The notes below the pieces were generated by a model. That model did not search any database and was not told where the DNA came from. It saw only the letters and a program-made list of their open reading frames with translations. This document shows positions 8,786 through 54,936 of a stretch of 64,000 nt of DNA, in pieces. The stretch is from IMG/VR virus record IMGVR_UViG_3300045135_002615, positions 232,643 to 296,642 of that record; one strand, written 5' to 3'. Position numbers and translations under genes: made by a program. Position 1 is the stretch's first letter, and each line of letters starts with the position of its first letter.

Positions 8786-9387
8786 CCAAAATAGGATGAT
8801 ACTTTGTGGCGAACCTCTTGCACGAGGTTTTTTACTTTTTTACTATCCCACCCATATGTCCTAGCAATGTGTGAAGACTTCATCCCACCCATCATCGCGT
8901 CATACACTTTAAGGGCATCATCGGTGAAGCGACTTCTTACCTCTTCCATGATCATGTCATCCGAGGGGTCTTGGTCATAAGACAAGTCCATAGAGTGTGA
9001 GTGAGAGCTTGAGATGTCCTCCTCAACACCCAACATGGCTTTAGAGCTGTCTTTACGGTGTTTATTGATGACGTTCATTACGATGCAGTTCATCACCATG
9101 ACCACATAGGTTGAGAAAGCTGACTTCTCAGGGTCATAGGGACAAGAACCCTCATTACGGATCATAATCCCTTTGTAGACTTCTTGTAGGACATCTTCCG
9201 GATCAAGTCCTTCCTTAGATACGGAGTGGGCTTGTCTCTTATAGAAGATAAGGCGAACGTCTTGACTTCTTGTATCAAGGTCAATCCCTAGTTTGCGGGG
9301 TTTGACTTGATCAAAACTGAAGGATGCGATAGGAGTGATCCCGATTTGCCATTGACGTGTGGCTTCAATCCCTGAATAACTCGACAT
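8761..9387 (-). CDS. RNA polymerase sigma factor (sigma70 family, ECF/SigH-like size)
   Basis: Region 2-like DPEDVLQEVY..YDPEKSAFSTYV; C-terminal region 4-like HTH GMKSSHIARTYGWDSKKV. Confidence 0.8.
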   Translation of the reverse strand: MSSYSGIEATRQWQIGITPIASFSFDQVKPRKLGIDLDTRSQDVRLIFYKRQAHSVSKEGLDPEDVLQEVYKGIMIRNEGSCPYDPEKSAFSTYVVMVMNCIVMNVINKHRKDSSKAMLGVEEDISSSHSHSMDLSYDQDPSDDMIMEEVRSRFTDDALKVYDAMMGGMKSSHIARTYGWDSKKVKNLVQEVRHKVSSYFGWREMSPC

Positions 9388-35172: not shown

Positions 35173-35273
35173 GTTTGGCACAAGTAATCCCTTTGTCGGT
35201 ATAGTGAGGTAGCCATTTGGCACACTCACCGCGAGGCAACCTTTCCAAGCCTCCTCAGACAAAGGGATTACTT

Positions 35274-35837
35274 GTGAAGATTAAGACTCTTCTTTTGACC
35301 TTAGCTCTTTCACTTTCTTTTACGGTGGCTCAAGCAACTCCGACTTGCTCAAGCACAAAGTATAAGCTCGTGTATGATGGCGTGTCTTTCAATGACACGG
35401 AGGATGCTGCGTACCGCAAGTTGAAGCGTACCTTTGGACGCAAGGCGAGAGTCCGTAAGATTAATGGCAACATCATGGTTGACTTTAAGAAGCCATTTAA
35501 GAACCTTGACACGATTGCATACAGTATCAAGGGCGGGCGTGTGACCCGTATCATCTTCAGCTACCACAATAACTTCATCGCAAGTCTTGGAGGTCTTAAG
35601 GATGCTCTCATGACTCTCTTGAAGGCGAGTGTGGACAAGTATGGTAAGGCTGATAATGTAGACACCTCAGAGGCTAAGTCATCAGGTAGAATCTCTGCGG
35701 TGTGGGCTGAGGACAATGGTGGTCAACTGATCATTGTAGGTAAAGACCCTTCCACCTTGATTGTCCGTGTAGATTGCAACTCTCTTGAGAAGCATCTCAT
35801 TGATCAGGTAACCAAGTCAGCTAACTTCGGCTTCTAA
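35274..35837 (+). CDS. Secreted/periplasmic hypothetical protein
   Basis: GTG start; signal peptide MKIKTLLLTLALSLSFTVAQA. Confidence 0.7.
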   Translation: MKIKTLLLTLALSLSFTVAQATPTCSSTKYKLVYDGVSFNDTEDAAYRKLKRTFGRKARVRKINGNIMVDFKKPFKNLDTIAYSIKGGRVTRIIFSYHNNFIASLGGLKDALMTLLKASVDKYGKADNVDTSEAKSSGRISAVWAEDNGGQLIIVGKDPSTLIVRVDCNSLEKHLIDQVTKSANFGF

Positions 35838-51149: not shown

Positions 51150-51204
51150 ATATCCTCCTTATAGGTTTGGTGTGTAAACCCTATACGAGGTCTTCCCACA
51201 AAGC

Positions 51205-53055: not shown

Positions 53056-53104
53056 GCCATAGTTCCTTTATAAAGGTCGATATAGGTCTAATAAGGGGTT
53101 GACT

Positions 53105-54481
53105 ATGATCGCAACACTACATGGGATAGCATCTGCTTCAAGGGGGCTCTCAAGAGTTATTACAAATAACCTAGTCCTTCACTACAACACCTTTAACCCT
53201 AGCTCATATGTTAAAGGTCAAGGGACCACAATCAACGACCTCTCAGGGAACGGACTACATGGGACAATCGTTGGAAGTCCTCCATGGTCTACCAACTACT
53301 TTTCGTTCTCTAATGACTACATCACCTCCGCGAACTTAGCACCTTCTCTGACTGAAGTACACACCGCAGAACTATGGGTTTACCCTACAGGTAATGGTGT
53401 ACTCTTACAAGCTAATGCTCAAGCTACACCGAACACTAGCTACCATCACTCCACCATAGAGATTGTAGCAGGCAAACTAGAATTCGGTCTGTGGAACGGC
53501 TCAGGTATCACCTCTACAGGTCCAACCTCTACTATCTCTTTCAATCAATGGCATCAAGTAGTCCTTACTTACGATGGCTCAATCATCAGAGGATATCTTG
53601 ATGGTTCGTTCGCGGGTTCCGTCAATGTCACATGGGACTCTCCAGAGGACAGCACGGGTGTTTTCTACTACAACTTCGGTTATAGAGACACCACATCTCA
53701 AGGTGATGGGACTGACTTTGATGGTCGTTTTGGGATTATGAGGATCTATAGTGTTGCCTTCTCCCTACAGGCTATCCAACAGAACTACAATGCGGTCACA
53801 GGAAACGTCAGTGACTTAGTGTCGGATACCCTCAGACTCTATTATGACCCTTCTCTCTCAGCGTCATATAGCTCACCGAGTAGCCTCATTTATAATCTTG
53901 CTCCCAATACAAACACAGGCACTCTCTCTAATGTCTCCGCCAATGGTACTTACCTCACCTTTAACGGCTCAAGTTCTCAAGTCTCTGTCCCTGACTCTTC
54001 TATCTTAGAACCTGGTTCATCTAACTTCACAATAGAAGCATGGGTAAGGATACATAGCTTTGGGAGTACAATGGTGATTGCAGGTAAGTTTGATAACGGG
54101 GGCTTGGCAGCGGATGTCTCTTATTCACTACGGGTCAACGCATCAGGTGTCTTAAGATGTGAGGTAGGAGATGGCACAGGCTCACTAGATAGTCCTCTCT
54201 ATCAGGCTACAACCAACACATGGTATCAAGTCGTAGGTGTGATAGATAACACGAACAATCAGCTCAAGCTCTATATCAATGGTGTATCTCAAGGCACACC
54301 TACCACCATGAGCTATACGAGTATCTTGAATAGTGCGAACAATCTGTATCTAGGTAGCTACAACAACGGGGAATATTCTCAGTACCTTGATGGGGACTTA
54401 GGGGTAGTGAGGGTCTATCAAAGGGCTTTGACTGATGCGGAGGTGTTGGCGAACTACAACTACGACAGATCCAAGTATTGA
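53105..54481 (+). CDS. Tandem LamG/concanavalin A-like lectin protein
   Basis: LVLHY..DLSGNGLHGT, NQWHQVVLTYDG, FTIEAWV, NTWYQVV, VRVYQRALTDAEVLANYN; two LamG repeats. Confidence 0.85.
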   Translation: MIATLHGIASASRGLSRVITNNLVLHYNTFNPSSYVKGQGTTINDLSGNGLHGTIVGSPPWSTNYFSFSNDYITSANLAPSLTEVHTAELWVYPTGNGVLLQANAQATPNTSYHHSTIEIVAGKLEFGLWNGSGITSTGPTSTISFNQWHQVVLTYDGSIIRGYLDGSFAGSVNVTWDSPEDSTGVFYYNFGYRDTTSQGDGTDFDGRFGIMRIYSVAFSLQAIQQNYNAVTGNVSDLVSDTLRLYYDPSLSASYSSPSSLIYNLAPNTNTGTLSNVSANGTYLTFNGSSSQVSVPDSSILEPGSSNFTIEAWVRIHSFGSTMVIAGKFDNGGLAADVSYSLRVNASGVLRCEVGDGTGSLDSPLYQATTNTWYQVVGVIDNTNNQLKLYINGVSQGTPTTMSYTSILNSANNLYLGSYNNGEYSQYLDGDLGVVRVYQRALTDAEVLANYNYDRSKY

Positions 54482-54521
54482 GGGTAAAAAAAAGGGAGGG
54501 TGGGGCTCACTTCAAAAAAAA

Positions 54522-54662
54522 AACACCCCCTAAGTAAATCACATTAAGGTGGGAGAGTGGGCAGTCAGGGGCTTGAACCCTGGACCGTCGGTTTATGAGA
54601 CCGATGCTCTGACCAACTGAGCTAACTGCCCATGTCTTAATGTGATTTACTTAGAGGGTGTT
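54522..54662. repeat. 27-bp inverted repeat enclosing the tRNA(CAT) gene
   Basis: AACACCCCCTAAGTAAATCACATTAAG (54522-54548) and CTTAATGTGATTTACTTAGAGGGTGTT (54636-54662); 1 mismatch. Confidence 0.9.
54558..54631 (-). tRNA. tRNA with CAT anticodon (Ile2 more likely than elongator Met), no encoded CCA
   Basis: GGGCAGT/ACTGCCC acceptor with C4-G69, TCGGT-CT-CAT-AA-ACCGA; no initiator features. Confidence 0.9.
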
Positions 54663-54742
54663 ATCAACCCTATACGAGCCTGCATCCTAACCGAGTATGA
54701 CAAGCGGAAGACCATGCAGGGAACTTCCTTAGAGTTGAGTAG

Positions 54743-54815
54743 TACACTCAGCAGGGCTCGAACCTGCGACCTACACGTTAGGAATGTGTTGCTCTTCCTA
54801 CTGAGCTATGAGTGC
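54743..54815 (-). tRNA. tRNA-Arg(CCT), no encoded CCA
   Basis: GCACTCA/TGAGTGT acceptor, ACACA-TT-CCT-AA-CGTGT, GGTTCGAGCCC. Confidence 0.9.
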
Positions 54816-54819
54816 TTAG

Positions 54820-54892
54820 TACACCAAGTAGGGCTCGAACCTACGACCTACGGTTTAGAAGACCGTTGCTCTTCCGACTGAGCTATTGGTGC
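54820..54892 (-). tRNA. tRNA-Arg(TCT), no encoded CCA
   Basis: GCACCAA/TTGGTGT acceptor, ACGGT-CT-TCT-AA-ACCGT, GGTTCGAGCCC. Confidence 0.95.
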
Positions 54893-54907: not shown

Positions 54908-54936
54908 ATTATACTAATGTAAGGTTGGCTTGTCAC
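54908..54936 (-). promoter_or_regulatory. sigma70-type promoter for the tRNA-Arg pair
   Basis: GTGACA-N17-TATAAT on the minus strand, 16 nt upstream of the tRNA. Confidence 0.75.

What the first reader, a model, noticed from the sequence alone, without database searches (positions are those of the whole stretch)
54514..54675. tRNA(CAT) clamped inside a 27-bp stem with a U-tract, apparently a self-contained transcription unit
Seen: 27-bp inverted arms flank the tRNA 4 and 9 nt away. The single mismatch is a U-G pair on the tRNA-sense strand, and the 3' arm runs into a 10-U tract (54514-54523). A TATAGG -10-like box (54669-54674, minus strand; same AACCCTATACGAG context as near 51178) would start transcription about at the first base of the 5' arm. 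I saw no such clamp around the other four tRNAs. Inference: the precursor is a long dsRNA stem with the tRNA as its loop. It could be an RNase III-type processing stem as in rRNA precursors, a terminator with a tRNA loop, protection from nucleases, or a trace of a tiny mobile cassette.
Basis: partly seen in the sequence, partly recalled or inferred. Interest (0 to 1): 0.72.

Follow-up and report, generated by a model that had tools for sequence, protein, structure and literature searches.

The report
Phage tRNA locked inside a long stem
A marine jumbo phage encloses its tRNA-Met gene between two 27-base complementary arms followed by a run of U; the RNA stem most likely ends the tRNA operon and marks the precursor for double-strand-specific cleavage, an arrangement that none of about 800 other phage and metagenome tRNAs showed.

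Summary
tRNA(CAU) lies at 54558-54631 (-). Its arms are 54636-54662 and 54522-54548, with 26 Watson-Crick pairs and one U-G. T10 lies at 54514-54523. This is the longest inverted repeat in the 296,642-bp phage genome, and only 1 of its 11 tRNAs has one. Among 802 tRNAs from unrelated phage and metagenome contigs, the best flank-to-flank stem scored 28, against 62 here.

Four roughly 90%-identical relatives keep the arms and the U tract. They show no compensatory change, so covariation is untested.

A more distant relative (helicase 76% identical) has an unrelated 17-bp clamp around tRNA-Lys. That clamp has no U tract and sits inside a tight protein-coding operon.

The "self-contained unit" idea is weak. 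TATAGG lacks the key final T of a sigma-70 -10 box, and no -35 box is conserved. A near-consensus promoter lies upstream of the two tRNA-Arg genes, with no terminator between them and the clamp.

In three relatives a promoterless tyrosyl-tRNA synthetase gene follows the U tract, so termination is probably leaky.

Best reading: a leader-trailer helix that acts as a partial intrinsic terminator and as an RNase III-type processing stem. No RNA data could be found, so function is inferred.

The parts
54908..54936 (-). Sigma-70-type promoter (GTGACA, 17 nt, TATAAT; 11 of 12 matches) upstream of tRNA-Arg(UCU). It is the probable start of the three-tRNA transcript.
   Evidence: Both hexamers are identical in all five relatives.
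54819..54892 (-). tRNA-Arg (anticodon TCT)
   Evidence: 72 bits.
54742..54815 (-). tRNA-Arg (anticodon CCT)
   Evidence: 63.5 bits.
54663..54741 (-). Spacer between tRNA-Arg(CCU) and the clamp. It contains no terminator-like site. It contains the motif CTCGTATAGGGTT (54666-54678) with TATAGG at 54669-54674.
   Evidence: A 12-nt indel lies just upstream of the motif in four relatives.
54636..54662 (-). 5' arm of the clamp (leader strand), 27 nt
   Evidence: 0 of 27 columns vary among five relatives.
54558..54631 (-). tRNA(CAU), elongator type (G1-C72; no run of three G-C pairs in the anticodon stem). Met versus Ile2 is undecided. No CCA is encoded.
   Evidence: A compensatory U-A to A-U swap at the first anticodon-stem pair in L103 shows selection on the tRNA.
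54549..54557 (-). 9-nt unpaired 3' spacer, the most variable segment of the locus
   Evidence: 2 variable columns plus 1 gap column out of 10.
54522..54548 (-). 3' arm of the clamp (trailer strand). Its G+C-rich end (GGGGGUG) abuts the U tract.
   Evidence: 1 of 27 columns varies: T in the window, C in four relatives.
54514..54523 (-). T10 tract; 8 U remain unpaired after the stem
   Evidence: T9-T10 in all five relatives. In this genome 16 of 26 T>=8 runs follow a strong local hairpin.
54486..54513 (-). Window-specific 28-29-nt insert that ends in a second T8 tract (54486-54493). It is absent from the four relatives.
   Evidence: (29 left out at 54486). Its local fold is not better than shuffles.
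53099..54481 (+). Convergent gene for a laminin-G-domain virion protein. Its stop codon lies 32 nt from the T10 tract.
51177..51189 (-). Second exact copy of CTCGTATAGGGTT. It lies between a canonical terminator and an RBS-ATG, 36 nt upstream of a start codon.
   Evidence: It reads CTCGTATAAGGTT in relative L102.

Best explanation
The two arms are the leader and trailer of pre-tRNA(CAU), the last gene of a three-tRNA operon: promoter 54908-54936, then Arg-UCU, Arg-CCU and Met-CAU. Proposed sequence of events: once the tRNA has folded, its ends bring the arms together. When the 3' arm emerges from the polymerase, a 27-bp helix forms whose G+C-rich foot is followed directly by 8 unpaired U. This is the geometry of an intrinsic terminator, and part of the polymerases stop there. 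The same helix is a long, almost perfect RNA duplex of about two and a half turns, which is the natural substrate of the host's RNase III. Cleavage in the stem would free a pre-tRNA with short tails for RNase P, 3' trimming and CCA addition. In relatives that carry a downstream gene, cleavage would also separate the tRNA from that mRNA. Shown here: the structure, its rarity, its retention with the U tract in relatives, and the operon context. Inferred: transcription through both arms, termination, and cleavage.
For: Structure and chance: z -8.7; longest inverted repeat of the genome.

Rarity: the flank-stem score is 62. The maxima elsewhere are 27 in 559 random IMG/VR phage tRNAs, 26 in 207 metagenome tRNAs and 28 in 36 tRNAs of LR745208.

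Terminator reading: the U tract is conserved (T9-T10) in five genomes. The foot of the stem is G+C-rich. 16 of 26 T>=8 runs in this genome follow a strong local hairpin, whereas the sequence just upstream of this T10 gives only -7.6 kcal/mol without the distant arm. Other terminators in the genome have loops of up to 28-31 nt.

Operon reading: the 11/12 promoter is at 54936-54908, and no terminator-like site lies between it and the clamp.

Processing reading: relative G001 has an unrelated 17-bp clamp (score 39; duplex-energy z -6.5) around tRNA-Lys, with the same 9-nt 3' spacer and no U tract. It lies 8 nt after the stop of one ORF, and the next ORF starts about 3 nt after its 3' arm, within a chain of overlapping ORFs. 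No promoter or terminator was found near it on the tRNA's strand. In L102, L105 and L107 a 374-aa TyrRS gene follows the U tract on the same strand, with no promoter-like site between. The clamp therefore cannot be a full stop there.

Constraint: 1 of 54 arm columns varies, against 11 of 133 other non-coding columns.
Against: No RNA data exist for this phage; no RNA run was listed. Transcription, termination and cleavage are therefore all inferred.

There is no compensatory change in the arms. The one substitution turns A-U into A.C on the tRNA-sense strand in four of five genomes, where it would be G-U on the other strand. Strand-specific selection is not shown.

An 87-nt loop is far outside the range of known intrinsic terminators. 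The G001 clamp lacks a U tract and, at 17 bp, is short for RNase III.

The phage encodes no RNase III and the host is unknown.

The near-perfect arms could also mean a young repeat rather than a selected one.
Confidence: 0.5

Rival explanations
1. Self-contained unit. A promoter with TATAGG as its -10 starts transcription at the first base of the 5' arm, so the primary transcript is exactly arm-tRNA-arm-U. This could operate alongside read-through from the upstream promoter, for example at a later time of infection.
For: The last base of TATAGG lies 7 nt upstream of the arm's first base. The same 13-mer at 51177 sits in a promoter position: after a terminator and 36 nt before a start codon. 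In L102 that site reads TATAAG, the commonest -10-like hexamer of this phage (20 observed against 1.7 expected at -25 to -50). TATAGG and TATAGT also lie 11-14 nt upstream of tRNA-Thr and tRNA-Tyr. The motif is invariant in five relatives although a 12-nt indel lies next to it.
Against: TATAGG lacks the T at the last position of the hexamer, and the sigma-70 scan does not report it. TATAGG itself is barely enriched upstream of genes (4 against 1.9). The indel rules out a conserved -35. The 13-mer has only two copies in 297 kb, so it is not a promoter class. A strong promoter upstream makes a second one unnecessary.
Confidence: 0.3
2. DNA-level element: the terminal inverted repeats of a miniature mobile cassette that carries a tRNA, a recombination or inversion site, or a protein-binding palindrome.
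For: The inverted repeats are near-perfect. The region is a hotspot of cassette exchange: the TyrRS cassette is bounded by direct repeats T9-GCTC(TC)AATAC, and other tRNA sets lie next to the same neighbouring gene in L104.
Against: There is a single copy in the genome. Neither arm nor tRNA has an exact copy in IMG/VR. No target-site duplication flanks the arms. The tRNA has the same orientation in all five genomes, and no strand-changing joint appears at the arms in four metagenome runs. An 87-bp spacer is too short for easy inversion. The G001 clamp has an unrelated sequence and lies just downstream of tRNA-Glu, as tRNA-Lys does in G000.
Confidence: 0.08
3. A lock on the precursor. The stem keeps the tRNA as an inert, nuclease-resistant store, protected from exonucleases or host anticodon nucleases, or delays its use until a later time of infection.
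For: Only the anatomy: both ends of the tRNA are buried in a duplex 4 and 9 nt away. That should hinder RNase P and 3' exonucleases until the stem is cut or opened. The two clamped tRNAs are CAU and UUU.
Against: There is no direct evidence. Only 2 of 33 tRNAs in the clade are clamped, and the orthologous tRNAs in sister genomes lack a clamp.
Confidence: 0.07
4. No function: a young inverted duplication, for example from replication template switching, that happens to bracket a tRNA and to abut an existing U tract.
For: The arms are near-perfect, no covariation is seen, and only one tight lineage carries this clamp.
Against: A second, independent clamp brackets another tRNA with the same 9-nt 3' spacer in G001. 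None was found in 802 other tRNAs. The arms are more conserved than the neighbouring non-coding DNA. The 3' arm replaces the local hairpin that other U tracts of the genome have.
Confidence: 0.05

Closest known systems
Leader-trailer helices of bacterial rRNA precursors (RNase III processing stems of 16S and 23S rRNA; reviewed in PMC10250234)
   Same: Sequences upstream and downstream of a stable RNA pair into a duplex of more than 20 bp that encloses the whole mature RNA and lies a few nucleotides from its ends. From established knowledge, RNase III cuts both strands and leaves short tails for final trimming.
   Different: Here the enclosed RNA is a single 74-nt tRNA in a phage. The duplex is almost perfect. 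It is fused to a U tract. No antitermination boxes are seen. Cleavage is untested.
Rho-independent terminators at the ends of bacterial tRNA operons (E. coli valU and lysT operons, where RNase P removes the terminator; PMC4176162)
   Same: The last tRNA of an operon is followed closely by a stem and U tract that must be removed during maturation.
   Different: In the known cases the hairpin is local and lies wholly downstream of the tRNA, with a loop of a few nucleotides. Here one strand of the hairpin lies upstream of the tRNA, so the tRNA is the loop.
E. coli metY-nusA-infB operon (my recollection of Regnier and Grunberg-Manago 1989; not checked here)
   Same: A tRNA gene leads an operon with protein genes. 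Partial terminators and RNase III cleavage separate the tRNA from the mRNA. This is like the Arg-Arg-Met-TyrRS arrangement in L102.
   Different: The RNase III hairpin there lies downstream of the tRNA and does not enclose it.
RNase III cut in the phage T4 tRNA cluster precursor (my recollection of Pragai and Apirion 1981; not checked here)
   Same: A phage tRNA precursor whose maturation involves host RNase III.
   Different: That is a single site upstream of the cluster, not a clamp around one tRNA.

Membership tests
Intrinsic (Rho-independent) terminator | G+C-rich stem directly followed by a run of U | tested here: met
   The foot of the stem, CACCCUC/GGGGGUG, abuts U10, of which 8 are unpaired. 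T9-T10 in five genomes.
Intrinsic (Rho-independent) terminator | Compact hairpin with a loop of a few nucleotides | tested here: not met
   The loop is 87 nt and contains a tRNA. The terminator scan, with a loop limit of 3-8, does not report it. The other inverted repeats followed by a T run that were examined have loops of 5-31 nt.
Intrinsic (Rho-independent) terminator | Lies at the end of a transcription unit | tested here: inconclusive
   True in the window and L103, where a convergent gene follows. Not true in L102, L105 and L107, where TyrRS follows on the same strand without a promoter-like site.
Intrinsic (Rho-independent) terminator | RNA 3' ends in the U tract | not testable with these tools
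   No RNA run was listed for this phage.
RNase III processing stem (leader-trailer helix) | Leader and trailer pair and enclose the mature RNA | tested here: met
   The arms lie 4 nt before and 9 nt after the tRNA.
RNase III processing stem (leader-trailer helix) | Duplex of about two helical turns (20 bp or more) | tested here: met
   27 bp in the window and 28 bp in relatives. The G001 tRNA-Lys clamp has only 17 bp.
RNase III processing stem (leader-trailer helix) | Pairing kept by compensatory changes in relatives | tested here: inconclusive
   Five genomes at about 90% identity show one arm substitution, and it is not compensated. The second clamp, of unrelated sequence, is independent support for the architecture only.
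RNase III processing stem (leader-trailer helix) | Staggered cleavage of both strands by RNase III | not testable with these tools
   This needs an in vitro or rnc-mutant assay. The phage itself has no RNase III gene.
Sigma-70 promoter (for the proposed own promoter) | A -10 hexamer with A at position 2 and T at position 6, plus a -35 hexamer 16-18 nt upstream | tested here: not met
   TATAGG has G at position 6. It is not reported by the scan. The 12-nt indel upstream rules out a conserved -35.
Miniature inverted-repeat mobile element | Several copies in a genome, with target-site duplications | tested here: not met
   Single copy. No duplication at the arm ends. No exact copy in IMG/VR.
tRNA (Rfam RF00005) | Cloverleaf scoring above the gathering threshold | tested here: met
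   72.8 bits against a threshold of 29. The bacterial initiator hallmarks (a 1-72 mismatch and three G-C pairs in the anticodon stem) are absent, read.

The most novel reading that the evidence does not exclude
Clamped tRNAs are a distinct phage device: a module of promoter, duplex lock and U tract that yields a hairpin-sealed pre-tRNA. Its release by RNase III, or by another duplex-specific factor, would time or protect the supply of particular tRNAs (CAU, UUU) during infection, for instance against host tRNA-cutting defences. The module would be exchangeable as a cassette within the variable tRNA/aaRS island.
Probability: 0.1. Interest if true: 0.8.

Novelty: new variant of a known kind. Interest (0 to 1): 0.55.

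Why it matters
Leader-trailer helices are a hallmark of rRNA maturation, and intrinsic terminators are compact hairpins. A tRNA serving as the loop of a 27-bp helix that also carries a terminator U tract joins the two. I found no description of this in the searchable literature.

If it works as proposed, long-range helices closed by a folded RNA domain can terminate transcription. That bears on how terminators are predicted.

It would also show how large phages excise tRNAs from mixed tRNA/mRNA transcripts.

It is cheap to test, because a 200-nt fragment can be assayed in vitro and in E. coli.

Tried and rejected
RNA evidence:
- No RNA run was listed.
- The DNA runs only showed relatives at roughly 90% identity.

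Searches for more relatives that gave nothing useful:
- Exact arm and exact tRNA 5' half in IMG/VR: none.
- Exact tRNA 3' half in metagenome contigs: none.
- Homologues of the neighbouring laminin-G-domain gene at 60-72% identity have other neighbours and no tRNAs.
- The region beside the G001 helicase gene has no tRNA.
- The 82-aa ORF next to the operon has no homologue outside its own 90% cluster.

CTCGTATAGGGTT as a general promoter was rejected. There are only two copies within 1 mismatch in 297 kb, and hits with 2-3 mismatches are mostly inside genes.

The abundant G001 motif ATAAGGGGTTACA (63 copies) has no family in G000. It resembles the 51177 site only with a gap.

The most frequent 11-mers of G000 come from a coding tandem repeat, not a promoter.

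A local terminator hairpin made by the 3' trailer alone was rejected. It folds no better than shuffles and is broken in relatives.

The second U tract, 54486-54493, was considered as a back-up terminator. It is window-specific and its fold is not significant.

Phage polymerases and RNase III:
- No RNase III.
- No multi-subunit RNA polymerase beta subunit.
- The T7-type polymerase search was uninformative because no control genome matched.

The strand argument from the U-G pair was weakened. In four relatives the second mismatch is a wobble on the opposite strand.

Complex prediction and structure prediction were not used, because no protein claim is made.

Full report
**What the window is.** The window is the last 64 kb of a 296,642-bp IMG/VR virus record, estimated 95% complete. 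Public runs place it in seawater and estuary metagenomes. Its replicative helicase is 76% identical to that of a 375-kb IMG/VR phage, G001. It is 44% identical to that of the 485-kb uncultured phage LR745208. The genome is therefore a marine jumbo phage with no cultured relative. I found no phage RNA polymerase beta subunit and no RNase III, only a weak sigma-70 region-2 match. The genome is rich in canonical hairpin-plus-T terminators. TATAA-N elements are enriched 25-50 nt upstream of start codons. This suggests transcription by the host polymerase.

**The observation.**
- tRNA(CAU) lies at 54558-54631 on the minus strand.
- The 27-nt arms are at 54636-54662 and 54522-54548, with spacers of 4 and 9 nt.
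- One U-G pair sits on the tRNA-sense strand.
- T10 lies at 54514-54523.

The RNA from the 5' arm to the U tract folds at -68.5 kcal/mol, z -8.7 against shuffles. The repeat is the longest inverted repeat in the whole genome. The next longest are ordinary bidirectional terminators of 18-21 bp with loops of 5-19 nt. None of the other ten tRNAs of the genome has anything similar.

**How unusual it is.** I scored the best ungapped flank-to-flank stem (40 nt on each side; G-C 3, A-U 2, G-U 1, mismatch -4) for several sets of tRNAs.
- 559 distinct tRNAs from 119 random IMG/VR loci: maximum 27.
- 207 tRNAs from metagenome contigs that carry a similar tRNA(CAU): maximum 26.
- 36 tRNAs of LR745208: maximum 28.
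- The window's clamp: 62.

Among 33 tRNAs of the phage's own clade there is one further outlier, described under "A second, independent clamp" below.

**Close relatives.** Contig runs held relatives at roughly 90% DNA identity. I recovered four such loci (L102, L103, L105, L107) through exact-protein look-ups. All carry the same Arg(UCU)-Arg(CCU)-Met(CAU) array, the arms, and a T9 or T10 tract.

The arms are the least variable non-coding part. One of 54 arm columns varies, against 11 of 133 in the spacer, promoter region and 3' spacer.

There is no compensatory change. The one substitution (T in the window, C in the other four) makes an A.C mismatch on the tRNA-sense strand, which would be a G-U wobble on the other strand. 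The relatives gain one extra closing A-U pair, giving 28 bp.

The tRNA itself shows a compensated U-A to A-U swap in L103, so it is under selection.

**Is it a self-contained unit?** A near-consensus promoter (GTGACA, 17 nt, TATAAT) lies at 54936-54908, just upstream of tRNA-Arg(UCU). Both hexamers are identical in all five genomes. No terminator-like site lies between it and the clamp. The simplest transcript is therefore Arg-Arg-Met, and the 5' arm is simply part of the last spacer.

Several points count against the proposed own promoter.
- TATAGG lacks the final T of a -10 hexamer and is not reported by the scan.
- The 12-nt indel just upstream in four relatives rules out a conserved -35.
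- TATAGG is only 2.2-fold enriched upstream of this phage's genes, against 10-12-fold for TATAA-N.

Some points favour it.
- The identical 13-mer at 51177 sits in a true promoter position.
- That site reads TATAAG, this phage's commonest -10-like hexamer, in L102.
- TATAGG and TATAGT lie just upstream of tRNA-Thr and tRNA-Tyr.

I rate an additional own promoter at about 0.3. It is not needed for the model.

**Terminator or processing stem?** Three points favour termination. The G+C-rich foot of the stem abuts the U tract. The U tract is conserved. In this genome, long T runs mostly follow a strong local hairpin, whereas here only the distant arm can supply one (-7.6 kcal/mol locally).

One point argues against a full stop. 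In L102, L105 and L107 the U tract is followed on the same strand, about 75 nt later, by an intact 374-aa tyrosyl-tRNA synthetase gene and a 132-aa ORF. These end at a canonical terminator, and no promoter-like site lies between the clamp and the synthetase start. The window and L103 have lost this cassette at different junctions. G000 has no TyrRS at all. So in the probable older arrangement the clamp sat inside an operon. That fits a leaky terminator combined with a cleavage site.

**A second, independent clamp.** In G001, tRNA-Lys(UUU) is bracketed by 17-nt arms of unrelated sequence (score 39; duplex-energy z -6.5). There is again one U-G pair on the sense strand and a 9-nt 3' spacer, but no U tract. 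It lies 8 nt after the stop of one small ORF, and the next ORF starts about 3 nt after its 3' arm. Both belong to a chain of overlapping same-strand ORFs, with no promoter or terminator hit on that strand. There the helix cannot be a terminator. Its obvious role is to mark or insulate a tRNA that must be cut out of an mRNA. The orthologous tRNAs in sister genomes (tRNA-Met in G001 and G008; tRNA-Lys in G000, G003 and G008) are not clamped. The device is therefore gained or lost tRNA by tRNA.

**Conclusion.** The feature is real and very rare. It most likely acts at the RNA level as a leader-trailer helix. In this lineage it is combined with a U tract, so that it ends (incompletely) the tRNA operon and offers a 27-28-bp duplex to RNase III. 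Confidence in this composite is 0.5, because no transcript data exist. DNA-level and no-function readings are less likely for three reasons: there are two independent, precisely positioned cases; the element is single-copy; and the arms are conserved. I found no published precedent in four literature searches. The nearest analogues are the rRNA leader-trailer helices (PMC10250234) and the tRNA-operon terminators that are removed during maturation (PMC4176162).

Noticed in passing
L096:6064-6185 (G001:C1:177563-177684): tRNA-Lys(UUU) of the related 375-kb phage is bracketed by an unrelated 17-bp clamp (one U-G pair, spacers of 6 and 9 nt, no U tract). It sits between two ORFs of a tight same-strand operon.
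   Followed up: yes
window 35179-35276: A second clamp-like element: perfect 19-bp arms (35179-35197 and 35258-35276) enclose a 60-nt domain with two hairpins. It starts 7 nt after the stop of a 3113-aa ORF. The fold z-score is -5.7 on the plus strand and -6.3 on the minus strand. There is no Rfam match and no DNA match in five relatives.
   Followed up: partly
L102:6389-8161 (also L105, L107): A cassette of about 1.8 kb (TyrRS of 374 aa with PF00579 and S4 domains, a 132-aa ORF and a canonical terminator) lies between the clamp and the laminin-G-domain gene in three relatives. It is bounded by direct repeats T9-GCTC(TC)AATAC. It is absent from the window and L103, with different junctions, and G000 has no TyrRS.
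   Followed up: partly
L104:1565-1840: In another genome whose laminin-G-domain protein falls in the same 90% cluster, the gene is followed by a terminator and then tRNA-Tyr, tRNA-Asn and tRNA-Glu, instead of the Arg-Arg-Met array. The site is a variable tRNA/aaRS island.
   Followed up: no
window 54486-54513: A 28-29-nt insert that ends in a second T8 tract is present only in the window genome. Its C-rich part resembles the left end of the TyrRS cassette of relatives, as if left behind by the deletion.
   Followed up: partly
G001, whole record (e.g. G001:C1:171280, 336153, 357193): 63 copies of ATAAGGGGTTACA (1 mismatch allowed), usually preceded by TATAG and often by CGAYACTAG. They often occur as back-to-back inverted pairs. 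This looks like a phage-specific promoter. G000 has no such family, although the 51177 site (TATAGGGTTTACA) resembles it if a gap is allowed.
   Followed up: partly
G000, genome-wide (e.g. window 51186 site; G000:9873, 12321, 144015): TATAA-N hexamers, TATAAG above all (20 observed against 1.7 expected), are enriched 25-50 nt upstream of start codons. This suggests a promoter class that does not need the final T of TATAAT.
   Followed up: partly
window 9088-9240 (-): A weak sigma-70 region-2 match (19.2 bits, below the cut-off) in a 217-aa open frame; a possible phage sigma factor.
   Followed up: no
G000:C1:110302-110480 (outside the window): A tandem 15-nt repeat (unit CAAGAGAGTGGTGRT) inside a coding region accounts for the most frequent 11-mers of the genome.
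   Followed up: no
L246:888-963 (LR745208): tRNA-Arg(CCU) of the 485-kb phage has a 13-bp flank-to-flank stem (one mismatch) 7 and 2 nt from the tRNA. Its score of 28 is just above the background maximum, so it may be a weak clamp or chance.
   Followed up: no
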